From Euprymna scolopes (taxonomy: Eukaryota): a stretch of DNA of 64,000 bases. A program made the position numbers and the translations under genes. Shown piece after piece: positions 5,150-44,106 of the stretch. Under the pieces are notes generated by a model. The model did not search any database, was not told the origin of the DNA, and saw only the letters and a list, made by a program, of their open reading frames with translations. The stretch is from assembly GCA_053919585.1 (NCBI GenBank), contig CM132809.1. One strand, 5' to 3'. Within the stretch, counting starts at the first letter, position 1, and each line of letters begins with the position of its first letter.

Positions 5150-5730
5150 TATGTGGAACGGCTCATCAAAAACTTATTTTCGTTCGACTTGAAGACACCC
5201 ATATTGTAGTCAGCCGGAAAGCAGAAAAACGAAAGACAATTCCACAGACGTGTAGTTCTAAGAAAGAAGCTTTGTTCATGGAATCTACGTTTAGGTTTAG
5301 GCTCATATAAAGAGTGGGGGGAATTATTGGTAGTGATTTCAGCATAGACGAGTGTTTATTGTGAAAGTTTGGCGAGGGAAGACCATAGACTGATGCTCAG
5401 TTGAACACTTTCCATGAAAATAACGATACGTCAGAAACAAACTCGCAATATTTCTTCTGTGAGCTAGAGGTTGCAGAGAAGAGAAAACGACATCTCTTAC
5501 GAGGCTACGAAGTCTATTTTGAACTCTATCAAGGCAGGGCAAGTCCTTTCTAGCAGCTCCTGCCTACATGTGACAAGAGTATTCCATTCTTGGGCGTACC
5601 TGGCTGTTACATAGATAGAGAATTGCATCAGCAGTGTGATAGCCACTGGATCGATCGAAAGATCCCACAATTTTTCAAGCGGCCATGGCAAGGGATCAAC
5701 GATTAGAAACAAGTTTCTTAAAGGATCGTA
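5150..5730 (-). mobile_element. 3' fragment of a CR1/L2-like (Jockey superclade) LINE
   Basis: Translation LDRVQNRLRSLVRDVVFSSLQPLAHRRNIASLFLTYRYFHGKCS resembles the post-RT C-terminus of these LINEs. Same motifs as 58600-58760. Confidence 0.65.
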
Positions 5731-5762
5731 CATAATTATTTACTATAATTATTAAATACTTA

Positions 5763-5800
5763 CAGACACTAGTGGTTCATCCTTTGAGGAATCATTAGTG
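5763..5800 (-). ncRNA. Degenerate type I hammerhead motif
   Basis: Minus strand reads ca-CTAATGA-TTCC-TCAAA-GGAT-GAACC-ACTAGT-GTC-tg. Two core substitutions. Same family as the 31239-31275 motif. Confidence 0.45.
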
Positions 5801-7579: not shown

Positions 7580-8119
7580 TTATAAGTATGCGGNNNNNNN
7601 NNNNNNNNNNNNNNNNNNNNNNNNNNNNNNNNNNNNNNNNNNNNNNNNNNNNNNNNNNNNNNNNNNNNNNNNNNNNNNNNNNNNNNNNNNNNNNNNNNNN
7701 NNNNNNNNNNNNNNNNNNNNNNNNNNNNNNNNNNNACAAATTTTCATAGTGGCAACACCGGATATGATAATATAAAACACCATTAAAGTAAATTTAAGTA
7801 TGTTCTTTTTTAACATAGTTGTCTTATATCCATTAAAGAACGGTACTGGTTTACCAGAACAAAAGTAATATAACATGGCCTCACGAGGACATATGCTTTT
7901 AACCAACGCTCCGTCCGAAACATTAAAATATCAAGTGTTGCGAACATATAAATTACTTTTTACCAAGGAAAGTACATCTGACACGTGCCTCTCATACCAC
8001 TTTGATTTTTCTGTGATCTTTATGATGAATACATATTATATTGTATACACTTTACACTATTTGGGGCGTCTTTTTTAAAGCGGAAAAAAATCAAATTCAC
8101 AACATATCTTCAACAATGG

Positions 8120-9262
8120 GCCCTTCGTGACTGTAAGTAAGAATTGTTTTTGGGTGAAATAAACTTCAGCTTTTAGTTTTTGAAAAGAAAACAAATAAAC
8201 TTTCCAGATAGAATCGGCACATTTTTGCCCGAAAACGCTATTACACAATTAAACACTTTAATAAAGATAAAGATTATAAACTAAAATGAATATAATATTA
8301 GCACTTGCGTCTAGAAAATAAAAAAAATACAAATCTACAATGTAACTGCTTAAATACCTCCTCTGTGACTGCAGATAAGAATTGATTCTGCTTGAAATAA
8401 AATGCAGCCTTTATTGTTTTTTTTAGAGAAAACGGTCATCCCGTGATATAGCACGTTACTTGGACAAGCATGTTCTTTTGTAAGGTGTGAAATAGGGGGT
8501 TATAGAAGAATGTTTTCCGATCTATTTATGCTCTAATTCAAATGAACTTGGCAGATAGAATAGGCACATTGTGGCTGGATAACACCCATTACACAATTAA
8601 TAAAACACTGAAATATATATAAATATTGAATACTAAAATAAATACGATATTGGCACTTGCATCTAGAAAATTACAAATTACAACTGCTAAAACGTCTTCT
8701 GTGACTGCAAATAAGATTTGATTTTGCTTGAAATACACTTCATTTCTTTTATGAAAGAATACAGTAATCGCGTCATATAGCTCGCTACTTGGAAAGGCAT
8801 GTTCTTTTATAAGTAGAAAAGTATGACAAGGGTGGTAAGAAAACAGAATTTTCGGCTCTGTTATGCTCTATTTAAAATAAAATAGCATTGTTATATTTTT
8901 GCTCGAGAAAACACATTACACAACTAATAAGACAATAAAATAAAGATTAAGCTTAAAAACTGAAAAAAATATAATAGCACTTGCATCAAACAGACAAAAA
9001 TACAAATACACAACTTAATTGCTAAAATACGCCCTAAGTGACTGCAATAAGAAGTGATTTTGCTTGAAAAAGAATCAGAGTTTTCATTTTTAAAGGAAAA
9101 CGGTAATCTTGTGATATAGCTCGCTACTTGGACAAGCCTGTGTTTTTTTTATATGTAGTAAGGTGTTTAAGGGGGAGTGTACGTGAACAGCATTTTTAGA
9201 TTTATTTATGCTCTATTTCAAATTAACTTGCCAGATTAAATCGTCACATTTGTGCATGAGAT
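8120..9262. repeat. Diverged tandem repeat, about 337-bp unit, about 3.5 copies
   Basis: Anchor GTGACTGCA..TAAGAA recurs at 8128, 8365, 8701 and 9038 (first unit internally deleted). Shared GCACTTGCATCTAG, CATTACACAATTAA and CGCTACTTGGA blocks. Confidence 0.85.
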
Positions 9263-21741: not shown

Positions 21742-21780
21742 TATCTGAAGAGAGCGAAACAAAGCTTGAAATGCGTTATA
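21742..21780 (+). ncRNA. Minimal type I hammerhead in the PLE 3' terminus
   Basis: tat-CTGAAGA-GAGC-gaaacaaa-GCTT-GAAAT-GC-GTT-ata. Confidence 0.7.
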
Positions 21781-21995
21781 AAAATATGTGTAAATAAAAA
21801 TATGATAAAAGGCTGAACACCCTACAATTGNNNNNNNNNNNNNNNNNNNNNNNNNNNNNNNNNNNNNNNNNNNNNNNNNNNNNNNNNNNNNNNNNNNNNN
21901 NNNNNNNNNNNNNNNNNNNNNNNNNNNNNNNNNNNNNNNNNNNNNNNNNNNNNNNNNNNNNNNNNNNNNNNNNNNNNNNNNNNNNNNNNNNNNNN

Positions 21996-24900
21996 CCGAC
22001 GTATGAGACTCCGACAATTAACCAGAAGGTCCAGAACTCAGCGTGTCGACATTCACTTAGACGTATGTGGCACTTTATCGTGCTAGAGACTTGCAATGGC
22101 GACCACAGTGGTTACAGACATATAAATGCGACAATTAGCCTTACATTGCTCAGTATTATTTTTTGACTTGACTCTCGCTTCTTTTAGTTTTTTTATGCAA
22201 ATCGCCGAGAACTCCTTGATTTTTCTGTCAAACATTTCTATCCACTTCCTTCTGTCTATTGCAGTTAGCTCAATGGTGTTATATTCAATATCAAGAACCT
22301 GCAACTTAGACTTTATTTTGTCTTTGTAACGCAACAATGGCCGTCCCACGTTTCGATGGTATCTGTCTAATTGGCCATACAGGAGTTCCTTCGGTATCCT
22401 ATCAGCATCCATTCGCATCACATGGCCCGCCCATCGGAGCTGCGACTGGATTAAGAAGCTTTCGATGTTGCTGATTTTACAAAGTGTGAATAATTTCGCA
22501 TTTTATATTTTGTCTTTCAAAGTAAAACCGCAAATGGCACGTAGACATCTCTTATGGAAGGCGTCAAGTTGCGAAATTTGTTTTCGGTACGGGGTCCATG
22601 TCTCCGAGGCATACAAAAGTGTGGACAGTACCACAGCCTTATATACATGAATGTTTGTCTTCAGGCTTAAACCCCGAACATTCTATAATATTGTGCGCAG
22701 ATTGCCAAAGGCGCTGCTTGCTCGGGAGGTACCGTTGATAACTTCATGGTTAAGAGATGCACTTTAATCAACCACACTTCCCAAGTATGTAAACTTGTAA
22801 ATATACTTCAGGTTTTTCCCATCTACCTGAATCGACATCTGAGGAAAATTGTGCACGGTTTGTTTCTGTTTAACACCCTGTACTTGTTTTGGTGTAGGTG
22901 GTGGCTGGTAGATGACTTCCGTTTTCTTTATACTGATTGTCAAGCCAAAGGCTTTACATGCGGTAGAAAACCGATTTACAAGATGTTGAGCCTCCTCCCG
23001 AGAAGTCGCGACAAGGGCAGCATCATCTGCAAACAGAAAATCTCTTATAATGATTCTTCGGAGAAGTGTTTTCTCTTTGAAGCGTCGTTGATTAAAAATC
23101 CCACCATCTGTACGGAATTGGAAATGAACGCCAGTGTCAACATCTGCAAATGCATATTTCAGCATAACATAGAAGTAAAGGACGAATAGTACTGGAGCCA
23201 TTACACAACCTTGTTTTGTTCCATTGGTCACATTGAAAGGCTCAGAAGAGTCCCCATTGGACATCACTGAAGCCTTCGTGCCATCATGGAAGGATGTTAT
23301 AACTTTGAGCATATTGTCAGGTATACCAATTTTCTTAAGGATTTTCCATAGGGTAGTTCGGTTGACAATGTCAAAGGCTTTAGTAAGATCAATGAACACT
23401 ATGTATAGCTCTTGGTTCTTTTCTCGAACTTTCTCAGAGACCTGTAGCAGAGAAAAGATCATATCTATTGTACCCCGAAGAAAGCGGAAACCAAACTGCG
23501 ATTCGGGTTATATCTCATCTACAAGATGTCTAATTAATCTGTTGATTATTAGTCTGCCCATGATTTTTCCAGCAATTGAGAGCAGAGATATGCCACAGTG
23601 ATTGTCACAGGAATTCCTCAAGCCTTTATTTTTATAAAGATGGTAAATTGATGCATCTTTAAAGTCCTGTGGGACTTTTCCAGATGTCCAAATGCACACG
23701 AAAAGTGCATGTAGCTTTCTGGCCAGTTTATGACCACCATATCTGTAGACTTCCGGTGGTATACCGTCATTTCCTGGTGCTTTACCCAATGATATCTGTT
23801 CAACTGCTGCAAGGACTTCTGGGAGAGTTGATAACACGGATAATTCTGATCTCTCGGGAACCTGCTCACTTGAGTTTATAATCTCATCATCTGTTACCGA
23901 AGAAGAATTTAACACTGTTTCAAAATTTTCCTTCCAGCGTCTCAAGCTTCCGTCCTTGTCTGTCAGTAATGTCCAATCTTCTGCCAAAAATGGCGAAACT
24001 CCTGATTCTTGAGGGCCGAAAACCTTCCTTATACCTTCATAAAATGTTTTTGTGTCCTTTCTGTTGAATGCTGACTGAACAGCTTCTGCGTGTGCCGTCC
24101 ACCATTTCTCTTTCATCTGTCTAGTGTCCTCTGCACTTTCCCTTTGCAGGTTTTGTATGCCAATCTTTTTTCAGTAGAGTTTTGGTCGTCAATCCATGCT
24201 TTGTGAGCTTGATGCATTTTCTTAATTTGATCCTGGGCTTCTATATCCTGGTCATCAAACCAATCCTGGTGCTTCCGTATGTGTAAGCCCAGCACTTCAA
24301 GGGCAGTGGAATGGGTGATATTTCGTAGCGCTTCCCAGGACGCTTCTATGTTGTCAGTTATTTCTACACCATCTTAATTTTCATCAAGCTTGTCAGAAAG
24401 TATTGTTCGAGTGTCAGTATTCTTAAGCGACAATACATTAATACGTTTTGGAATAGATGACTTCTTTACCTGTCTGCGCCAAAGACTCAGAGACACCTTG
24501 CTACGTAGCAGGACAGTATCTGATAGCTTGTATGGAAGGAGCGCGTTATTTTGAAGTCAAGAAAATCACGTTTCTTAGTGATGACATAGTCAATCATATG
24601 CCAGCTGTTTGAACGAGGGCGCATCCATGTGGTTTTGCGACTATTTTTCTGTTGAAAAACTGTGTTAGTTATGGCCATATTGAATTCTCTGAAGAGGGAG
24701 AGCAAATGAATACCATTTTAATGCATTCTACCAACGCCATGATGTCCCAGAACCTCTTTCCATAATTGGAAGTCAGAACCGACCCGAGCATTATAGTCGC
24801 CCATCAAAATGAGTTTGTCCTTATGGTGAATACCACCGATTACTTCTCGTAGTTGTTGGTAGAATTCATCTCTCTCCTCATCCAGTCTGCTCATTGTTGG

Positions 24901-27061: not shown

Positions 27062-27310
27062 AGATACGTCACAATCACGTTGACACACCGGTTCTTTCCA
27101 GATCACCGAAGTTAAGCAACGCTGAACCTGACCAGCACCGGATGGGTGATCCTTTCGGTAGACTAGGCGCTGTATGTACGTGCTGGGAAGGTTGGGCGTG
27201 GGGCCAGCACCCTCACCCCGTAAAAAGAACAAAGTCGCTACAAAATTATCTACAAAGTTGTAGATGGTATATGCCCTTTAGGAGCTCAAGGCTATGGATG
27301 CATGGCTGGG
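27062..27310 (+). mobile_element. 5S rRNA-derived SINE (SINE3-like) with RTE-like tail
   Basis: 27062-27177 resembles animal 5S rRNA (CACGTTGA..CACCGGTTCT..GATCACCGAAGTTAAGCAACG..GGATGGGTGA..GCTGTA) but is diverged. It is followed by GGTTGGGCGTGGGGCCAGCACCCTCACCCCGTAAAAA, an RTE-leader-like motif. Confidence 0.75.
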
Positions 27311-30300: not shown

Positions 30301-31229
30301 AAACTCGACTTTAGCGTCAAGTATGCCCCCGGGACTCATTGCCATCATCGTTTGAAATATGTAATTGACTTTCTTCCGACTGTTCAATTTGCAAAGCAAG
30401 ACAGAATTGTCGGACAAACTATCTCGCTATTGACCAGTGCCGGGCTAATGCGACCATTACTTAGCTTAGTGTTGTCTGTGTCGAGCAAGCAACGTTAATT
30501 ATAGCCAAAAGGCTGGCATATTATCCACTCAATTAAGATGCAAACGTTATTCATTTGAAGCGAATATTTAAAATTCATCGGCTATATCACATGCGGGACT
30601 TAATGATTGCAATATATTGCAAAAACGTCAATAAAAGACAAAGGTACATGGAACGTATTTGTATGCAGCGAATAGCAATTGTAAAGGGAAATACAGTTCC
30701 TTCATTCAAATGATAAATGCTTCTGACATTGTTCTTACAATTTATCTAATGCAATCAATATTTTCAAACAATAATAATTGAAAACACAGGCAAGACTGTT
30801 GAATTTTTTTTTACTTTTAAATAAAACTTCTCTCAGTCTCGGCATGTTAACCTTTGATTCGGTAAAATATTTGGTAAAAGACGGATAGATCTTGAACGGT
30901 GGCTATTTTCGGAAGAGTTTCCCGGTAATTTAATGCGATTTTTATTTAATTCTATGCTTTGTCTACAAAAATTGCCATAATTATGCTTAAAATAGAGAAA
31001 CATTTACATTTACACTTTTATATCATGTAAAACATTCGGTAAATAATTTTCGATACGTTATCTATTGGTAACATACAAAGAGGTATAAACAGAAGGAATA
31101 CAAACACTCTCAGAAACATTCACATACACATATACACACACGCATATATATATGTGTGTGTGTGTGTGTGTGTTTGTGTGTGTGTGCATGTATGGGTGTT
31201 TGTGTGTGTATTTTGTTTACTACAATAAT

Positions 31230-31365
31230 AAAATACCTGCAGACTAGTGTTTTATCCTTTCAGGAATCTTCACGATAAACCCTAGTCAACGGATTCGAAC
31301 CTGGCAACACGAGACATGTCTAGCTCCTTTAGCAAAGAAAGTATGCCATCGGCTACCATTAACCT
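31230..31365 (-). mobile_element. tRNA-like head joined to a degenerate hammerhead
   Basis: Minus strand: A-box TAGCCGATGG, B-box GGTTCGAATCC, then GTGAAGA-TTCC-TGAAA-GGAT-AAAAC-ACTA-GTC. Confidence 0.55.
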
Positions 31366-31564
31366 CGAGAAATAACATTGAATTTAAACATTTTAATCTT
31401 TAAATGCTCTTTACGTCAGTCCAGTGATCTAATCGTTATACGATTATCTATGCATAAGAGCAAAATTGAACGACATAGTTCAACTTAAATTGCTCCCCGA
31501 TTGGAAACGAGTTTCATAAAGTGACTGACTTAATTATTTTTCACCATAACAATTAAATATGCAA

Positions 31565-31645
<81 letters not shown>

Positions 31646-33215: not shown

Positions 33216-34075
33216 GACTTTCGGAACTGTCCGATCTTACATTACGCTTAAATAAGATATTTTAATTTAGGTAGATTGCGAATGTATTATTATAGAATCA
33301 ATCCTCTATTGATTATTATATATTACAAGGAATAATTTGTCCTAGTGAACTAAACTTTAAAAAATGGTAAAAATTATAATAATGTCGTGCAAAAATTCTA
33401 TCTGTTTTTGTTTACAATAGAATGTAAGGTGATATTTGATTTGACGATGAATGCCTTTTATGAAGATTTTATTACTTCTATTGCATGGCCAAATATTCCC
33501 TTTATAAACTTCCTTTTTAATAAGTTCATGACACTATTTATAGGATCGGATTTTTTTTTCCATTTTCGATACTTATCAGATGAATATCTATACAAAGCGT
33601 CTCTAAGATTTCCAGACATATTTCGGTAACATTAGCAAAGGACAGGTTTGACCGTGTCTGAACCTATGCGGAATGAATTCAGAAACACACAGACATTGAC
33701 TTATATATAAGAGTAAAGAACACTACTAAAATATAACAGGAACAAAATACTTACACCAAGANNNNNNNNNNNNNNNNNNNNNNNNNNNNNNNNNNNNNNN
33801 NNNNNNNNNNNNNNNNNNNNNNNNNNNNNNNNNNNNNNNNNNNNNNNNNNNNNNNNNNNNNNNNNNNNNNNNNNNNNNNNNNNNNNNNNNNNNNNNNNNN
33901 NTATTACCGTATCTTTCTGTTAAGTTACATTATTGTTTCAGCTACCCGGACGTTTTTGACCGTCTGTAGCTTCTTCAGACTTTTACAGAAATGTTCGTTG
34001 TTATGGGATGAAAGAGTGAAAGAGTGAACATCTCCTGTAAAGAATGTCTCAGTTTCAATAGTTTATACTTAAATA

Positions 34076-35542: not shown

Positions 35543-35659
35543 AAGTGATGGTTGTGTAGTTCCAACGAGAGAAAAAATGTATATTTAAAAGAGTGTAGCC
35601 ATCAACAATTGTGGGTTTTTTTTTAAGGTTTTCATCATATTTTTATTTTAAAATATTTT

Positions 35660-35699
35660 TATAACGCGTTTCGAGCTTAGGGTGTGCTCTCTTCAGATA
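35660..35699 (-). ncRNA. Minimal type I hammerhead ribozyme (left PLE arm)
   Basis: Exact inverted copy of 40647-40686. Confidence 0.8.
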
Positions 35700-37049
35700 T
35701 TTTCGTAAAAAGTTTTTCTTTAAAATGGGAGTTTGTGGATATGCCTCCGCTGATATCAAATATGTTTTTCATAGTGGTGCGATGCGTGTGTTCAGTGTTT
35801 AGACGTTCTGTCTCCAGCTGTAAGTGTTTTACTGTGACCGGTCAAAGTTAGTTTCAAAGAGTGTTTTTTTAGTCCATATGGTGAAGGTTTTTATGGCTTC
35901 TTTAGGGTTCTTTTTTAAAGACTTTCTTTCCCCATGTATAGCATACACTCACACACAATCCCATACGCATACATATATATTCATGTACATGTACACATGC
36001 ACACGCACACAGGCACACACACATACACACACGTACATACATAGAAATATATGTAGGACCATACATATATACACATATACATACCCACCTACACACTCAC
36101 ACACGCACTCGCATACATCCACCGCTAACAATTATTTTTATTTTTTTATTTTTTATTTTATATATATATATATATATATATATTTTATATATATATATAT
36201 ATATTTTTTTTTTTCCTACAAAAACACGCATGTATATATGCGCTTAATCATTCAGACATATGTACACGTACCCACACACACACACACAAGTAAGATGGAG
36301 AATAATAGGTAGAAGATATGTATACACACACATACACGCACATACACACATATATGTACACACATATATGTATGTGCACATACACTCACAAACATCCACA
36401 TACTGTGTAGGCACATACACATACACACACATGCACACACACAGACATATGCAGGGGCTCACACATACGCGTATATCCATATTCACACGAACACATTTAC
36501 CCACTCATACATGTGCATACATATGTATATATACATACATACATACATACGGATGTGTATACACTCATCCACCCATATATATATATATATATATGGGCAC
36601 ATACATTCACAATCCCACACACACACACATATTCATACATCCCACCTTATGTATATATTGGTTGGAGTTTCCTTTCCAATCCATGCACATATGCATACAT
36701 GGATTCGGTCACCCAAACATAAGTGCACGTATATATACAAACAAGATGTAGCATAGATAACAGAGGATAGATAATTATACACACACGCATACACAATCAT
36801 ATGTGTACACCCACGCACATACACATATACACACGCACACACGCGCGCACACACACATACATACGTTTAATTTCTAGTTGTTTGTTTAGTTAAGAGAAAT
36901 GGTACTGTACTGGGTATGGGCGCGCGCACCCGCGAAAGTGTGCGTGTGCCTTATTGTGCTTTTTTGTTGTTTCGTGTGTGAGGGTGCACACCTACCCAAG
37001 CATGCATGCGTGTAAGTGTATTTTGTGTTTTGCCTATTTATGTGTATAA

Positions 37050-37685
37050 TTATGGAGAGACGTTTAAGGCGGGATTAAACTTTGTTATGAAATTTTTTTC
37101 TTGAGTTAGCAAGTAGAAGTAGTTGTCAGTTTGGAAGATGGGCATTATCTCGAATCTGCCTCCACTGCATGCGTGTATATGTTGTGATACATGTAGGTGT
37201 CTATTTTCCGCGATTTTGATGTTGGATCGGTGTAGGGCTACTCTATTACTAAGGTTTTTTGTAGCGCCTATGTAGGATTTATCGCATGCTGGACATTTTA
37301 TTACATAGATTACGTTTTTTGAGGTGCAATCTAGGTTTTTTTTAATTTTGAATGTTTGTATGGGGTTCGCAAATGTGTATGTGTTTCCCTCTAATATTAT
37401 GTTGCAGACTCCACATCGTTGTTTGTTGCATTTTGTGACTCCTTTTGTTGCGTCTTGATTGAGTTTGGATGAGGTAAGTATGCGTTGTAGGTTTTTGGGT
37501 TGGCGTTTGCTTTTTATTATTTTTGTTGTTTTAAGGAAATTGTTTAGTTTGCTGTTTTGGTTAAGTAGGACGAGGTTTTTCGTTATCTCTGTGAAAAGTT
37601 CAGGGTTGTTTGTGTTGTGTGTGGAGACGTATGTTAGGATTTGTTCTTTGTTTCGTTCTTTAGGGGTTCTCAAATCTTCTACTGG
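37050..37685 (-). pseudogene. Inverted duplicate of the PLE linker and GIY-YIG domain (uninterrupted frame)
   Basis: ORF 37050..37799; from PVEDLR onward it matches the right-arm translation. Confidence 0.9.
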
Positions 37686-39248
37686 ATATATTAGCGCTCC
37701 AAACCCTAGCGACCTTACATTTAGACCCATTGTAGCAGGACCAGCCTGTCCGACAAGCAGACTTAGCAACTTAATAGACATCTTATTGCAACCTTTCACA
37801 GATCAAGTTAAGAGCTACATAAGGGACGACATCCATGTTCTCACTACCTTACCACATACAGTAGAAAACGGGACACTATTAGTTACATTTGACGTTAGTA
37901 GTTTATATAGTAATACACCCCATGAATTAGGAAAAGAAGCAATACTATTTTGGATCAACAGACACGCACAAACACTACATCCCAGATTCACAAAGCAATT
38001 CATTATCGATAGTATAGACATAATTCTAAATAATAATTCCTTCGAATTCAACAATACCAACTACATCCAAACACTAGGTACAACAATGGGAACGAAAATG
38101 GCACCGACTTACGCAACCCTTACATTAGCCTACCTAGAAGAAACCCTATATAAAAAATAGAACAAAAATTTGGCCACAGCACTAAAATACTGTTTGTAGA
38201 ATCATGGAAAATGTACTTAGATGACTGCTTCATCCTATGGAAACCCACATGGGGGACATCACAGACTTACACACCATACTCCAGAACCTACACCCAAAAA
38301 TTAAATTCACCATAGAACAAAGCTCTACAGAATTACCTTTCCTAGACATACTGATAAAGATTAAAGACAATAACATTATCACAGACATGTACCGAAAACC
38401 TACAGACACCCAACAATACCTACACTTTAAAAGTCACCACCCTAAAAACTGCATAAAATCAATTCCCTACACCCTAGCACGTAGAATCTGCACCATAATC
38501 ACGGACAATAACCTTCGAAAAATCCGACTCAAGGAACTACGAATAAATTTAAGAAAAAGAAAATACCCATCACAACTTATAGACAAAGGGATCCAACTTG
38601 CGACAAATATACCAGTAGAAGATTTGAGAACCCCTAAAGAACGAAACAAAGAACAAATCCTAACATACGTCTCCACACACAACACAAACAACCCTGAACT
38701 TTTCACAGAGATAACGAAAAACCTCGTCCTACTTAACCAAAACAGCAAACTAAACAATTTCCTTAAAACAACAAAAATAATAAAAAGCAAACGCCAACCC
38801 AAAAACCTAAAACGCATTCTTACCTCATCCAAACTCAATCAAGACGCAACAAAAGGAGTCACAAAATGCAACAAACAACGATGTGGAGTCTGCAACATAA
38901 TATTAGAGGGAAACACATACACATTTGCGAACCCCATACAAACATTCAAAATTTAAAAAAAACCTAGATTGCACCTCAAAAAACGTAATCTATGTTATAA
39001 AATGTCCAGCATGCGATAAATCCTACATAGGCGCTACAAAAAACCTTAGTAATAGAGTAGCCCTACACCGATCCAACATCAAAATCGCGGAAAATAGACA
39101 CCTACATGTATCACAACATATACACGCATGCAGTGGAGGCAGATTCGAGATAATGCCCATCTTCCAAACTGACAACTACTTCTACTTGCTAACTCAAGAA
39201 AAAAATTTCATAATAAAGTTTAATCCCGCCTTAAACGTCTCTCCATAA
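37686..39248 (+). pseudogene. PLE reverse transcriptase plus GIY-YIG endonuclease, 5'-truncated, three single-base frameshifts
   Basis: RPIVAG, FDVSSLYSN, GTTMGTKMAPTYA, YLDD (38214-38225), LPFLD, KCNKQRCGVC linker, NVIYVIKCPACDKSYIGAT..R..H. Confidence 0.92.
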
Positions 39249-39701
39249 TTATACACATAAATAGGCAAAACACAAAATACACTTACACGCATGCATGCTT
39301 GGGTAGGTGTGCACCCTCACACACGAAACAACAAAAAAGCACAATAAGGCACACGCACACTTTCGCGGGTGCGCGCGCCCATACCCAGTACAGTACCATT
39401 TCTCTTAACTAAACAAACAACTAGAAATTAAACGTATGTATGTATGTGTGCGCGCATGTGTGCGTGTGTATATGTGTATGTGCGTGGGTGTACACATATG
39501 ATTGTGAATGCGTGTGTGTAAAATTATATATCATCTGTTATCTATGCTACATCTTGTTTGTATATATACGTGCACTTATGTTTGGGTGACCGAATCCATG
39601 TATGCATATGTGCATGGATTGGAAAGGAAACTCCAACCAATATATACATAAGGTGGGATGTATGAATATGTATGTGTGTGTGGGATTGTGAATGTATGTG
39701 C

Positions 39702-39759
<58 letters not shown>

Positions 39760-40646
39760 GTGGATGAGTGTATACACATCCGTATGTATGTATGTATGTA
39801 TATATACATATGTATGCACATGTATGAGTGGGTAAATGTGTTCGTGTGAATATGGATATACGCGTATGTGTGAGCCCCTGCATATGTCTGTGTGTGTGCA
39901 TGTGTGTGTATGTGTATGTGCCTACACAGTATGTGGATGTTTGTGAGTGTATGTGCACATACATATATGTGTGTACATATATGTGTGTATGTGCGTGTAT
40001 GTGTGTGTATACATATCTTCTACCTATTATTCTCCATCTTACTTGTGTGTGTGTGTGTGGGTGCGTGTACATATGTCTGAATGATTAAGCGCATATATNN
40101 NNNNNNNNNNNNNNNNNNNNNNNNNNNNNNNNNNNNNNNNNNNNNNNNNNNNNNNNNNNNNNNNNNNNNNNNNNNNNNNNNNNNNNNNNNNNNNNNNNNN
40201 NNNNNNNNNNNNNNNNNNNNNNNNNNNNNNNNATGCGAGTGCGTGTGTGAGTGTGTAGGTTGGTATGTATGTGTGTATATATGTATGGTCCTACATATAT
40301 TTCTATGTATGTACGTGTGTGTATGTGTGTGTGCCTGTGTGCGTGTGCATGTGTACATGTACATGAATATATATGTATGCGTATGGGATTGTGTGTGAGT
40401 GTATGCTATACATGGGGAAAGAAAGTCTTTAAAAAAGAACCCTAAAGAAGCCATAAAAACCTTCACCATATGGACTAAAAAACACTCTTTGAAACTAACT
40501 TTGACCGGTCACAGTAAAACACTTACAGCTGGAGACAGAACGTCTAAACACTGAACACACGCATCGCACCACTATGAAAAACATATTTGATATCAGCGGA
40601 GGCATATCCACAAACTCCCATTTTAAAGAAAAACTTTTTACGAAAA

Positions 40647-40686
40647 TATCTGAAGAGAGCACACCCTAAGCTCGAAACGCGTTATA
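40647..40686 (+). ncRNA. Minimal type I hammerhead ribozyme (right PLE arm)
   Basis: tat-CTGAAGA-GAGC-acaccctaa-GCTC-GAAAC-GC-GTT-ata. Intact core, palindromic AACGCGTT stem III, predicted cleavage after 40683. Confidence 0.82.
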
Positions 40687-40758
40687 AAAATATTTTAAAA
40701 TAAAAATATGATGAAAACCTTTAAAAAAAACCCACAATTGTAGATGGCTACACTCTTT

Positions 40759-40830
<72 letters not shown>

Positions 40831-41157: not shown

Positions 41158-42443
41158 ATAAAAACAGAGATGTGTGTGCCACAGACGATTTCTGATTGGT
41201 TAATCCAATAATCACATCTCCTAAAAAAGTATAGTTCTTACGCTCTTAACTTTACCATAAAATATTTTGGTCTTATTTATTGTCCATCTTAGAAGGGTTT
41301 AATTTTTTTCTAACTTGCGATTTACAACTTAAAAAAATACGAAACTAACTTACAATCTAACAATCGAATCTCAGACATCACGGCCGCCATTATGAAACTA
41401 AACCAAAAAAAAAAAAAAGCTCCTTCACTCGTGGTCTTTACATTTCGGGTTTGGGTACTTGTGCAGTTTTCCATTGACATTAAAAAATGGAAATATTAAA
41501 AAAAAATATATATATATATTGTACGTACTCGTCATGGGATAAAGTTTTCCTACAGAAAAAATCACGTAATTTCATCAAGTATTTATTTTTTTATAGCGAA
41601 AAAAGAAAAAAATCAACGCTACAAGCGAGTCATTATTAATTAAACAGAAAGTTCAAGTAGGGGGATTTCCCCCTTTTTTTTTTTAAGCGAGGCCAAATTT
41701 CGCGAATTTGGCCTTTTTTTAAAGCAGTTTGGCCTTCAAATTTCTGTTTAGCCTTTTTCTTCACCGATGAAATAAAAAAAGCAAATAAAAACAACGCAAT
41801 AAAACTTTTAAAAATACGGCACACCTTTGTTGTTCTTGTTTGTTTTTTTTGGTAATTTTCCTTATTTTTTTATTTTTTCAAGATAATACTATTAAATGGA
41901 CACTATTATGCCAAATTAGCCCAGCCCCCCCCCCAAAAAAAAATGCACAAAAATTCGAGATTTAAGGTTTTGACGAGATAATTTAGCGAATTGTCCGGAC
42001 TATTGCGAGAGAACCATCCATTAGTTTTTCCTGAAATTTTGCCACAAATTGTATTTCAATACATAGATGTGCATAGTAACTACATTTTTTAGCCGAAAAT
42101 TCCTGTTGCGTCCCCAGATTTCATCGGTGAAGAAAAAGGCCAAACAGAAATTTTGAAGGCCAAACTGCTTTAAAAAAAAGGCCAAATTCGCGAAATTTGG
42201 CCTCGCTATCAAACGATTTGACCTTTGAGAACTCTACCAAACTCCTCCTAAAATTTTGGGTCTAAACACGTGATATTTTAGATATAGATTCCTTGGACAT
42301 GGATCTAACTTATTACCTTTACTTGATCCCTAAACAATAAATGTTAAGAAGTCATAATAGGGGTCAAAGTTTAAAAAATTGACCGTTTTTTTTTCTCAGC
42401 ATTAACCTCAAAACACCTGGGCAACGCCGGGCACCGATTGCTA

Positions 42444-42444
<1 letters not shown>
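41155..42444 (+). mobile_element. Non-autonomous Helitron inserted in (TA)n
   Basis: 5' TC, 3' CCTGGGCAACGCCGGG hairpin followed by CTAG, A^T insertion site, no TSD. Confidence 0.75.
41686..42207. mobile_element. MITE-like insert with about 88-bp terminal inverted repeats nested in the Helitron
   Basis: AGCGAGGCCAAATTTCGCGAATTTGGCC...TCACCGATGAAAT (41686-41773) is inverted at 42118-42207. Confidence 0.8.
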
Positions 42445-42520
<76 letters not shown>

Positions 42521-42982
42521 CATGTCAGTATCAGATACATATATACTTCGTCATTTATTTTAAAAACCTAACAGTAATATTACTATAAGTTGATTTGAAT
42601 TTGTTAGGTTTGGAGGATTGCAATGAAAGTTTTGAAAAATGATCACCTTAAGCTAGCAGTATATTGTCTGCATTCCGCATGAACTAGACATTTTATAGTC
42701 GGCAATCTAGTATTGCTGTGGTAGTATACTTAAGTAGGTCCTTGGCATGTCGAGAATAAAAGTCAAATTATTGAGAGTTAATATTTATATAATAAAAATT
42801 TACAAAAAATACGTCCCCAAAATTAAGGGCGACTAGAATATAAACAAAACGATGATAACTCTTAGCTCTATGCTCACCTGAGGATCAGGGAGTGAAAACA
42901 AACAACACACCACTGAATCGATTATAAGAAAAAAACGAATAAATAAACACTCTTTCATTTAAAAACAATAAAAGCAGAATTG

Positions 42983-43050
42983 TGGAGATCTCGTGATCCG
43001 GTGGTACAATATAAGGCTACGTATCGCCTGGTTGTGAGTTCGAGTCTCAA
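42983..43050 (+). promoter_or_regulatory. tRNA-like Pol III head upstream of a hammerhead
   Basis: A-box-like TGATCCGGTGG (42994-43004) and B-box GAGTTCGAGTCTC (43036-43048), which forms a T-arm-like hairpin. Confidence 0.6.
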
Positions 43051-43051
43051 A

Positions 43052-43111
43052 TAGTTAGTTATACTGACGAGAAGTGATACTTCGAAACACGACATGTCTA
43101 CAGGTTAACTA
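43052..43111 (+). ncRNA. Type I hammerhead ribozyme with fully canonical core
   Basis: tagttag.tta.ta-CTGACGA-GAAG-tgata-CTTC-GAA-ACA-cgaca-TGT-C-ta.cagg.ttaacta. All three stems pair; GUC cleavage predicted after 43098. Confidence 0.88.
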
Positions 43112-43454
43112 ATTTAATGCAANNNNNNNNNNNNNNNNNNNNNNNNNNNNNNNNNNNNNNNNNNNNNNNNNNNNNNNNNNNNNNNNNNNNNNNNNNNNNN
43201 NNNNNNNNNNNNNNNNNNNNNNNNNNNNNNNNNNNNNNNNNNNNNNNNNNNNNNAGAAAGGTTTAGATCTGATGGAAGAATCATATTATATGTGAGTGGC
43301 ACTGTATAAGAGTTTGTGGGTATATTATTTAGTGGCATATATACATGAATCCGTGTCTTACTATCTATATACAAAAATACTGCTATTTAAATAAGTGATT
43401 GAAGTTTCCCCTGCATACACCACTATATACGAAATCAATTATAAATTGCTTGTT

Positions 43455-43530
43455 CCGCTTAGCTTAGTGGTAGGTAATCAATCTTTTGAGCCATGGGCTA
43501 TAAGATATCAAAGTTCGAAATTCAAGCAAA
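43455..43530 (+). mobile_element. tRNA-derived SINE head
   Basis: A-box TAGCTTAGTGG (43460-43470) and B-box-like GTTCGAAAT (43513-43521). Confidence 0.5.
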
Positions 43531-44106
43531 GTGGTCGTTAACAAAGGCTGTAAAAGCGGGCAGCGATCAAAAGTTTCTCAGCAAAGCAACAAGGCCCGCC
43601 ACAAGAGTTGAGAAAACACTTGATGATCGTATGTTACGTGAACAAGATCGACCTATTAATCGTATATATTTTTCATGTTATCTTGAACATTTGGTAGTGA
43701 GAACAGTTATATGCTTCTCTCCTTGAATATCAATTTAGCTGTGTGTGCGATTTTCGTATAATCGAACCATAATAGATCAGGTAAATGATGTTTATAAGAT
43801 ATTTAAGAAAGCTGATTAAATGTTAATAAATTAAAAAAATAAAAAGGTGCAAAATGTCTCATTGTTTATTCATTATTTTCCTACGTAATTTGCACAGGTA
43901 TTACTGCTCAAAATATATCAATATGAGGCTTTACTTCAGGATTGCACCATCTATCAATTTGTCTTTCTTTCTAGTTCTATCAATGGATCTACCTATTAAT
44001 ATATGCATATGTATGTCTGTGTATTCACCAGTATATTTGCCTATATTTCTCCACCCTTCTCTTTCTCACGCTCATTCTCCTTCTATATCTATCTATCTAT
44101 CTATAT

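What the first reader, a model, noticed from the sequence alone, without database searches (positions are those of the whole stretch)
42983..43111. tRNA-like Pol III head fused directly to an intact hammerhead ribozyme
Seen: A-box-like and B-box motifs followed within 3 nt by a type I hammerhead with canonical CUGACGA/GAAA core, three paired stems, an internal loop in stem I and a GUC site (after 43098). Established: A/B boxes drive Pol III transcription internally; PLEs carry type I hammerheads in their terminal repeats; a tRNA-like promoter plus hammerhead is known from Schistosoma SM-alpha repeats. Inference: this is a roughly 115-nt self-transcribing RNA that makes its own 3' end by self-cleavage, i.e. 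a non-autonomous ribozyme-SINE that may use PLE RT/GIY-YIG. The adjacent N-gap hides its 3' boundary.
Basis: partly seen in the sequence, partly recalled or inferred. Interest (0 to 1): 0.9.

Follow-up and report, generated by a model that had tools for sequence, protein, structure and literature searches.

The report
Hammerhead ribozyme retroelement copy, tRNA-like head
This is one somewhat mutated copy of a many-copy, non-coding jumping element that carries a self-cutting hammerhead RNA motif next to a tRNA-gene-like promoter box; the design is already known from blood flukes and from animal "retrozymes", so the locus is a new example, not a new kind.

Summary
The hammerhead is real. At 43053-43114(+) every conserved core base is present (CUGACGA, GAAA, A15.1-U16.1, GUC with cleavage predicted after 43098). 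The helices are type I: 4-bp helix II, 3-bp helix III, and an 11-bp helix I with a 5-nt bulge. Motifs this good occur twice in the window and in none of 60 shuffles.

The "tRNA-like head" is weaker. There is a good B box/T-arm hairpin (43035-43049). The A box has 3 mismatches, A+B pairs of this quality are no commoner than chance, and neither ARAGORN nor Rfam sees a tRNA.

The junction is not unique. Contigs of a DNA run and of a run labelled RNA from the same organism hold many 85-95% alike copies of 43005-43109. At least 12 contigs carry the same B box directly before the ribozyme.

I read it as a diverged member of a high-copy hammerhead retroelement, of the animal retrozyme / Schistosoma Sm-alpha kind. 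The genome also holds Penelope-like elements and (TA)n-targeted insertions.

Pol III transcription, cleavage and circles are not shown: two poly(A) RNA runs were nearly empty. The predicted monomer fold is weak (-1.7 against -14.7 kcal/mol). This scan has already reported many such elements elsewhere in this genome.

The parts
42444..42519 (.). (TA)38 microsatellite 463 nt upstream of the head. It is a possible insertion target, but the link to this element is not shown.
   Evidence: perfect self-complementary TA run. PLEs and related elements prefer (TA)n (PMC8557442).
42921..42982 (+). A-rich leader upstream of the head, shared with a minority of the paralogs.
   Evidence: summed contig depth 18-44 in the DNA run X1 and 4-10 in X2, against 0 over 42858-42920 except for 5.95 in X1 at 42858-42878.
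42983..43052 (+). tRNA-like head: weak A-box-like 42994-43004, B box 43037-43047, T-arm-like hairpin 43035-43049.
   Evidence: It is not called as a tRNA. The B-box half (43005 onward) is high-copy and conserved in paralogs.
43053..43063 (+). Hammerhead helix I, 5' strand.
   Evidence: At 43059 this copy has T where nearly all paralogs have C.
43064..43070 (+). Core CUGACGA (C3-A9).
   Evidence: No variant at 10% share or more among the laid paralogs.
43071..43083 (+). Helix II GAAG/CUUC with loop UGAUA.
43084..43087 (+). Core GAAA (G12, A13, A14, A15.1).
43087..43097 (+). Helix III: A-U, C-G, A-U with loop CGACA.
   Evidence: The noisy paralog consensus reads ACAUGCAUGU, a palindrome that this copy has lost.
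43098..43098 (+). C17 of GUC; the predicted cleavage is 3' of this base.
   Evidence: No pile-up of read ends was seen (table 6).
43099..43114 (+). Helix I 3' strand, with the 5-nt bulge CAGGU at 43101-43105.
43115..43122 (+). Start of the post-ribozyme tail (TAATGCAA), cut off by the N stretch.
   Evidence: Paralogs continue ...AATTTTATGCACG (loose ends).
43123..43254 (.). 132 N (gap or mask) that hides the 3' boundary. Not filled.

Best explanation
The locus is a diverged genomic copy of a high-copy, non-coding retroelement. The conserved module of that element is a tRNA-gene-related B-box/T-arm piece joined directly to a type I hammerhead ribozyme. This is the animal non-LTR retrozyme / Schistosoma Sm-alpha kind.

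Shown here:
- The ribozyme core and its three helices are intact in this copy.
- The B-box-plus-ribozyme block is the most conserved and most repeated part of the family.
- Copies carry sequence on both sides of the cut site.
- Penelope-like elements (RT, GIY-YIG, their own hammerheads) and (TA)n-flanked insertions are in the same window.

Inferred:
- The element is transcribed, perhaps from the internal B-box-type promoter (about 1 chance in 3), otherwise by read-through.
- The hammerhead trims multimeric or read-through RNA to unit length, probably better as a dimer or in tandem context than as this lone monomer.
- A Penelope-like reverse transcriptase copies the RNA back into DNA.
- This particular copy differs from the family majority in helix I and helix III, and it may no longer cut well.
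For: - Motif intact and beyond chance.
- Family membership: 69 DNA contigs and 14 'RNA?' contigs of the same organism lie on it at 85-99%. Summed depth is 234-480 over 43005-43088, against 0 over 42522-42773. At least 21 distinct contigs carry C at 43059.
- Junction: the 12-contig loose-end consensus repeats the B box just 5' of helix I. Contigs also span the junction directly, e.g. 43029-43089 and 43036-43102.
- Conservation: no variant at 10% share or more inside 43060-43098.
- The majority C at 43059 turns a U.G pair (with G43103) into C-G in the proximal type I helix, and would break the rival type III helix I.
- A distant relative in the window, 31185-31312(-), has the same order: perfect B box GGTTCGAATCC, then a hammerhead-like core, then GUC|UGCAGGU. 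Smith-Waterman score 39 against 27.5+-4.7 in shuffles, with 5 of 200 reaching it.
- That relative's insertion starts with a copy of its own tail next to (TA)n, a unit-plus-tail layout as in PLEs (PMC8557442, PMC11167929).
- PLE parts in the window: hammerheads at 35696(-) and 40650(+), GIY-YIG ORF at 37053-37799(-), RVT_1 ORF at 22767-23462(-).
- A 4-bp helix II with a short helix III matches the usual metazoan type I hammerhead (PMC4209133).
Against: - No second copy in the window and no tandem unit visible here.
- No Rfam hammerhead call at gathering score.
- The catalytic fold is predicted at -1.7 kcal/mol against an MFE of -14.7.
- No RNA ends at 43098, no circular joints, and only 2 weak reads in two poly(A) runs.
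- The 'RNA?' contig run may hold DNA.
- The Penelope hammerheads in the window are not similar to this one, so no partner is identified.
- The head is not statistically tRNA-like in this copy.
- Contig depth is not a copy number.
Confidence: 0.7

Rival explanations
1. The head is a working internal Pol III promoter. It makes a short RNA (about 115-135 nt: head plus hammerhead) whose 3' end is set by self-cleavage after 43098. That short RNA is the mobile unit, a head-first ribozyme-SINE.
For: - The B box is conserved across paralogs and sits at tRNA-like spacing from an A-box-like site.
- There is no T4 run between 42983 and 43122.
- Paralog consensus strings carry AATTTTATG about 20 nt after the cut site, a possible Pol III terminator; this copy has AATTTAATG.
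- Sm-alpha precedent (PMC2770079).
Against: - A/B boxes of this quality are at chance level, and no tRNA model matches.
- Repeated DNA begins upstream of the head, near 42921.
- Paralogs keep homologous sequence beyond the cut site. A copy made from an RNA ending at GUC would lack the helix I 3' strand.
- The in-window relative carries about 200 nt of element between (TA)n and its head.
Confidence: 0.17
2. The B-box/T-arm-like hairpin is not a promoter but an RNA part of the element. It could be a tRNA-like handle for the reverse transcriptase, RNase P/Z or the RtcB-type ligase. It could also be part of an alternative type III hammerhead that cuts at the GUC inside the B box (after 43046).
For: - Rfam Hammerhead_3 aligns 43039-43093 with helix III formed by UCGAGU (43040-43045) and ACACGA (43087-43092): 5 pairs and 1 mismatch, 18.4 bits, E=0.1 in a 148-nt search.
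- The hairpin is conserved next to the ribozyme.
- The retrozyme papers read here do not invoke Pol III.
Against: - The score is far below the gathering score of 48.5.
- The type III helix I would have only 3 of 5 pairs, and the family-majority C at 43059 breaks one more.
- The type I helix I has 11 pairs.
Confidence: 0.1
3. Chance: an unrelated SINE fragment happens to abut a Penelope hammerhead remnant, or the hammerhead is a chance motif.
For: - Single copy in the window.
- No Rfam call at gathering score.
- Weak A box.
Against: - The junction recurs in many independent contigs.
- 0 of 60 shuffles give a motif of this quality.
- The same layout is seen in a distant relative at 31185-31312(-).
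Confidence: 0.03

Closest known systems
Schistosoma Sm-alpha / Sj-alpha SINE-like retroposons
   Same: High-copy, non-coding elements in which a tRNA-related Pol III-type head and a type I hammerhead sit in one short unit. tRNAscan calls about 2,300 Sm-alpha copies tRNA-Gln-like, and blastn with Rfam's hammerhead motif gives about 38,500 candidates in S. mansoni (PMC2770079).
   Different: The host is different: earlier notes of this scan call it a mollusc, which I did not verify. No sequence similarity was tested or seen. Here the head is not recognised as a tRNA by any tool, whereas Sm-alpha heads are. Cleavage and transcripts are documented for Sm-alpha (my recollection of Ferbeyre et al. 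1998, which I could not open), but not here.
Animal non-LTR retrozymes (Cervera & de la Pena 2020, PMC7229834; preprint 10.64898/2026.07.22.740005)
   Same: A type I hammerhead in a small, AT-rich, non-coding repeat. Many copies per genome (about 5,000 in the mussel). Proposed mobilisation by Penelope-like elements.
   Different: Retrozymes are defined by tandem units that yield circular RNA. No tandem unit or circle is visible at this locus. Those papers do not mention tRNA-like heads or Pol III.
Hammerheads in the pseudo-LTRs of Penelope-like elements (PMC4209133)
   Same: Type I topology and a short helix III that is palindromic in the family majority, which suggests dimer action. PLEs with such hammerheads are in this window (35696-, 40650+).
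   Different: This one is not inside a PLE and has no ORF nearby. Its sequence differs from the window's PLE hammerheads. Its helix II has 4 bp rather than the 6-8 bp of min-HHRs.

Membership tests
Hammerhead ribozyme, type I | Conserved core: C3 U4 G5 A6 N7 G8 A9, G12 A13 A14, A15.1-U16.1, H17 | tested here: met
   CUGACGA 43064-70, GAAA 43084-87, A43087-U43097, C43098.
Hammerhead ribozyme, type I | Three helices with helix I open (type I), more than chance would give | tested here: met
   Helix I 11 bp with a 5-nt bulge, helix II 4 bp, helix III 3 bp. 2 sites in the window against 0 in 60 shuffles.
Hammerhead ribozyme, type I | Match to the curated covariance model (Rfam RF00163) | tested here: inconclusive
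   No Hammerhead_1 hit. Hammerhead_3 scores 18.4 bits, below its gathering score of 48.5. A control type I motif at 33978(-) is also missed.
Hammerhead ribozyme, type I | Compensatory changes in the helices across copies | tested here: inconclusive
   The only data are position-wise variants and 30-nt consensus strings from contigs. The one suggestive case is U.G in this copy against C-G in the majority at 43059/43103.
Hammerhead ribozyme, type I | Mg2+-dependent self-cleavage at H17 | not testable with these tools
   No read-end pile-up at 43098 in the runs laid. The predicted catalytic fold is -1.7 against an MFE of -14.7 kcal/mol.
Animal non-LTR retrozyme | Tandem units, one type I hammerhead per unit | tested here: not met
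   No tandem or second copy in the visible sequence. The N stretch at 43123-43254 could hide the start of a next unit.
Animal non-LTR retrozyme | Many dispersed copies in the genome | tested here: met
   69 DNA contigs at 85-99%, summed depth 234-480 over 43005-43088, and at least 21 distinct contigs at 43059. This is not an exact copy number.
Animal non-LTR retrozyme | Unit-length circular RNA | tested here: inconclusive
   No back-joints. The poly(A) runs gave 2 and 0 reads. Poly(A) libraries are a poor test for circles.
Animal non-LTR retrozyme | Sequence shared with a partner Penelope-like element | tested here: not met
   The window's PLE hammerheads and their flanks are not similar to the target. 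PLEs elsewhere in the genome were not searched.
tRNA-derived SINE / Sm-alpha-like | tRNA-related head with A and B boxes | tested here: inconclusive
   B box has 2 mismatches (core GTTCGANTC exact) and the A box has 3. Such pairs are at chance level. No tRNA call. However, the B box is conserved in paralogs, and a relative has a perfect B box and an 80%-threshold ARAGORN call.
tRNA-derived SINE / Sm-alpha-like | Head at the 5' end of the element (transcript starts just before the A box) | tested here: inconclusive
   Repeated DNA reaches upstream to about 42921, at lower depth. The relative at 31185-31567(-) has about 200 nt of element before its head.
tRNA-derived SINE / Sm-alpha-like | Pol III transcription | not testable with these tools
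   No Pol III occupancy or small-RNA data were available.

The most novel reading that the evidence does not exclude
In this genome, hammerhead retrozymes carry their own internal Pol III (tRNA-type) promoter directly in front of the ribozyme. Each new insertion would then be transcribed whatever its surroundings. Several unrelated families, each with a different tRNA-like head, would have reached this design independently. That would be a second, independent origin of the Sm-alpha design, and it would answer how animal retrozymes get transcribed, a point the retrozyme papers I read do not address.
Probability: 0.3. Interest if true: 0.55.

Novelty: new member of a known kind. Interest (0 to 1): 0.25.

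Why it matters
If the B-box module really drives Pol III transcription, these elements would be self-transcribing ribozyme retroposons in a second animal phylum. They would also offer a simple test bed for how retrozyme RNA is made, cut and copied. As a single locus it adds little. It is a moderately diverged copy whose 3' end is hidden, and the same kind of element has already been reported many times by this scan elsewhere in this genome, often as cleaner tandem arrays.

Tried and rejected
- Rfam at gathering score on the whole window: only a 5S rRNA.
- Rfam at E<=10 on 1 kb and on 148 nt: no Hammerhead_1 and no tRNA; one weak Hammerhead_3 match.
- ARAGORN at default, -ps and 80% thresholds: nothing on the target. 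The 70% call is not above background.
- Repeat finder and blastn of 42400-43122 against the window: only (TA)n matches.
- Smith-Waterman of head plus ribozyme against the upstream 463 nt, the post-gap 646 nt, the 5763(-) element, the 33978(-) ribozyme and the PLE ribozyme: none above shuffles. Only the 31185-31312(-) element is marginally above them.
- Test of whether the DNA just after (TA)n (42515-42600) repeats the post-cleavage tail: not significant for the target's own tail (355 of 500 shuffles reach the score) and marginal for one paralog consensus (30 of 500).
- Pattern scan for B box plus hammerhead in metagenome and viral contigs: one chance match in a bacterial tRNA cluster (L001) and none.
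- First sequencing-run search, with the 164-nt element: none listed.
- Rejected idea: that N stretches mark the element. Three of the hammerhead-like sites lie 25-50 nt from an N run, but the flanks of the 15 N runs share nothing and look randomly placed. I did not try to fill them.
- Ferbeyre et al. 1998 could not be opened.

Full report
**What is in the sequence**

From 43053 to 43114 on the + strand it can be drawn as a type I hammerhead:
- helix I 5' strand AGUUAGUUAUA (43053-43063);
- core CUGACGA (43064-43070);
- helix II GAAG/CUUC closed by UGAUA (43071-43083);
- core GAAA (43084-43087);
- helix III A-U, C-G, A-U with loop CGACA (43087-43097);
- C17 at 43098, so cleavage is predicted after GUC;
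- helix I 3' strand (43099-43114). It pairs UA with UA next to the core, bulges CAGGU (43101-43105), then forms nine more pairs.

All positions that define the hammerhead core are present. N runs from 43123 to 43254, and I did not try to fill it.

**Is it more than chance?**

I wrote a descriptor scan: CUGANGA, helix II hairpin, GAAA, helix III hairpin ending in U-H, and helix I allowing one bulge.
- It finds four sites in the window.
- At the target's stringency (helix II >=4 bp, III >=3 bp, I >=8 bp) two sites remain: this one and 33978-33926(-).
- None appear in 60 dinucleotide-preserving shuffles.
- A looser scan also picks up the two hammerheads of the Penelope palindrome, 35696(-) and 40650(+), and a relative of them at 21745(+).

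The window is therefore rich in hammerheads.

Rfam does not call the target as Hammerhead_1 at gathering score or at E<=10. It also misses the clean motif at 33978(-), so this miss is weak evidence.

In a 148-nt search Rfam gives 18.4 bits for Hammerhead_3 (gathering score 48.5) over 43039-43093. That is an alternative type III drawing. In it the GUC inside the B box (cut after 43046) is the site, and UCGAGU pairs with ACACGA as helix III. Its helix I has only 3 of 5 pairs. I rank it well below the type I drawing.

**Stability of the fold**

The nearest-neighbour energy of the type I catalytic fold is -1.7 kcal/mol, against an MFE of -14.7 for the same 66 nt. A weak helix III is normal for metazoan type I hammerheads, which are thought to act as dimers in tandem context (PMC4209133). 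It does mean that "intact" here refers to the motif, not to shown activity.

**The head**

The B box is good. AGTTCGAGTCT (43037-43047) lies inside a T-arm-like hairpin, UGAGUUCGAGUCUCA, at 43035-43049.

The A-box-like site at 42994-43004 has 3 mismatches in 9 specified positions. A/B pairs of this quality at tRNA spacing occur 17 times in the window against 18.8 in shuffles.

ARAGORN finds no tRNA at default, -ps or 80% thresholds. It draws a cloverleaf on 42978-43057 only at the 70% threshold, where it makes 166 calls in the window and of 300 shuffled segments. Rfam's tRNA model gives nothing.

On this copy alone, "tRNA-like Pol III head" is not established.

**Is the junction unique?**

No. 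There is no second copy in the window. I therefore laid contigs and reads of public runs of the same organism on 42522-43122 at 85% likeness or more.

None holds the locus itself at 99% or more. However, 69 contigs of a DNA run (X1) and 14 of a run labelled RNA (X2) lie on it at 85-99%.

Summed contig depth in X1:

| Stretch | Depth in X1 |
|---|---|
| 42522-42773 | 0 |
| 42795-42857 (a different short repeat) | 270-1040 |
| 42921-43004 | 18-44 |
| 43005-43088 | 234-480 |
| 43089-43109 | 97 |
| 43110 onward | 0 |

Contigs span the junction directly (43029-43089, 43034-43087, 43036-43102).

Twelve contigs that the aligner clipped at 43055 have the consensus ...GGTGAGTTCGAGTCTCAATAAGT just before it. 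That is the same B box in front of the same ribozyme, offset by a 1-nt indel.

Within 43060-43098 no variant reaches 10% of the depth, so the ribozyme core is the most conserved part of the family.

Past the cut site the clipped ends read ...ATAACTTAATTTTATGA and ...TATTAATTTTATGCACG. These are recognisably homologous to the target's TTAACTAATTTAATGCAA, so genomic copies continue through the helix I 3' strand and beyond.

Contig depth is not a copy number. Contigs also drop rare variants.

**How this copy compares with the family**

- At 43059 nearly all paralogs have C where the target has T (347 of 396 depth, 21 contigs). With G43103 that makes a C-G pair in the proximal type I helix I, where the target has U.G. 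It would break a pair of the type III helix I.
- The noisy majority consensus of helix III reads ACAUGCAUGU, a perfect palindrome of the kind described for dimer-acting hammerheads (PMC4209133). The target reads ACACGACAUGU.
- Most laid contigs are 85-95% alike.

The target is therefore a diverged copy, not a master copy.

**RNA evidence**

The evidence is weak.
- X2 is only guessed to be RNA, and it holds much of a 5.8-kb non-coding stretch, so DNA or nuclear RNA in it cannot be excluded.
- Two poly(A) raw-read runs gave 2 reads (under 90% alike) and 0 reads.
- There is no pile-up of ends at 43098 and no back-joint.
- Contig ends fall at 43098-43103 in both the DNA run and the RNA-labelled run, so they reflect paralog divergence rather than cleavage.

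Poly(A) libraries are a poor test for Pol III products or circles.

**Surroundings**

- A (TA)38 run lies 463 nt upstream (42444-42519). The DNA between it and about 42773 has no laid contigs.
- 2.5 kb upstream is a 5.2-kb inverted Penelope-like structure. It has hammerheads of the ACGCGU-palindrome type facing outward and an ORF with a GIY-YIG domain (37053-37799(-), 27.4 bits). An RVT_1 ORF lies at 22767-23462(-) (79 bits).
- These hammerheads are not similar in sequence to the target, so no partner is identified.
- A distant relative of the target lies at 31185-31312(-). It shows, in order, a perfect B box GGTTCGAATCC, about 15 nt, a hammerhead-like core whose key bases are mutated (G in place of C3, A in place of G12), and then GUC|UGCAGGU, as against GUC|UACAGGU in the target. 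Smith-Waterman score is 39 against 27.5+-4.7 in shuffles, with 5 of 200 reaching it.
- That insertion is bounded by (TA)n and (CA)n. It begins with a copy of its own roughly 33-nt post-ribozyme tail (28 against 18.1+-3.5, with 8 of 500 reaching it). This is a unit-plus-tail layout, like the 30-40 bp tail of PLE insertions (PMC8557442, PMC11167929).

**Comparison with what is known**

- tRNA-related heads joined to hammerheads in high-copy SINE-like repeats are known from Schistosoma Sm-alpha and Sj-alpha (PMC2770079).
- Small non-coding repeats with type I hammerheads, thousands of copies, circular RNAs and a proposed dependence on PLEs are the animal non-LTR retrozymes (PMC7229834; preprint 10.64898/2026.07.22.740005). 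Those two papers do not mention tRNA or Pol III.
- PLEs prefer (TA)n targets (PMC8557442).
- For one PLE, hammerhead cleavage was not needed for insertion in vitro (PMC11167929).

The target works like these elements as far as can be seen. As a retrozyme it fails the tandem-unit test at this locus. As a tRNA-SINE its head is unproven.

**Verdict**

The hammerhead observation is confirmed and the head only partly. The junction is a family feature and the element is very likely a non-autonomous retroelement. The short head-to-GUC Pol III RNA, however, is not supported by the layout of the copies.

It is a new member of a known kind. Earlier notes of this scan report many tRNA-headed hammerhead arrays elsewhere in this genome. 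They call it a 5.9-Gb mollusc, which I did not verify, so this locus adds little.

Noticed in passing
window 33926-33990 (-): A clean type I hammerhead: CUGAAGA, 6-bp helix II AGCUAC/GUAGCU, GAAA, short helix III, GUA site, and helix I of 4+6 bp. It lies about 100 nt from a (TA)n run, has no tRNA-like head, and is followed 25 nt later by an N stretch. Rfam misses it.
   Followed up: partly
window 31185-31567 (-): A complete-looking insertion between (TA)n and (CA)n. In order: tail-like start, roughly 200-nt body, tRNA-Ser-like head with a perfect B box (ARAGORN at the 80% threshold), a hammerhead-like core with G in place of C3 and A in place of G12 (dead), and a roughly 33-nt tail. A head-less relative of its ribozyme and tail lies at 5715-5800(-).
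   Followed up: partly
window 35563-40766: An inverted Penelope-like structure with arms 97-100% complementary. Outward hammerheads at 35696(-) and 40650(+) have helix III/loop ACGCGU. A GIY-YIG ORF lies at 37053-37799(-). A diverged copy of the same hammerhead is at 21745(+), near an RVT_1 ORF at 22767-23462(-).
   Followed up: partly
window 43456-43534 (+): A second tRNA-like stretch after the N run. It has a perfect A box, TAGCTTAGTGG, and a weak B box, AGTTCGAAATT. No hammerhead core follows it. ARAGORN calls it only at the 70% threshold.
   Followed up: no
window 42795-42857 (+): A short segment with the highest contig depth on the stretch (up to 1040 in the DNA run). It holds the hairpin-like CGTCCCCAAAATTAAGGGCGAC. 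One DNA contig joins 42847 directly to 43060, the start of the ribozyme, so it may belong to the body of a related element.
   Followed up: no
window 42839-42926 (+): A weak C/D-box snoRNA-like match (snoR69Y, 23.4 bits against a gathering score of 45, E=0.16 in a 1-kb search). Probably chance.
   Followed up: no
window 27062-27178 (+): A 5S rRNA gene (Rfam 51.7 bits, gathering score 38).
   Followed up: no
window 8085-9152 (+): Three to four tandem units of about 335 bp, 60-80% alike, with no hammerhead core that I could see. The unit size resembles the retrozyme arrays that earlier notes report for this genome.
   Followed up: no
window, 15 N runs (e.g. 21831-21995, 33762-33901, 43123-43254): N runs of 128-271 nt occur about every 4 kb. 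Three of them start 25-50 nt downstream of a hammerhead-like site. Their flanks share no sequence, so I treat the association as chance. They were not filled.
   Followed up: partly
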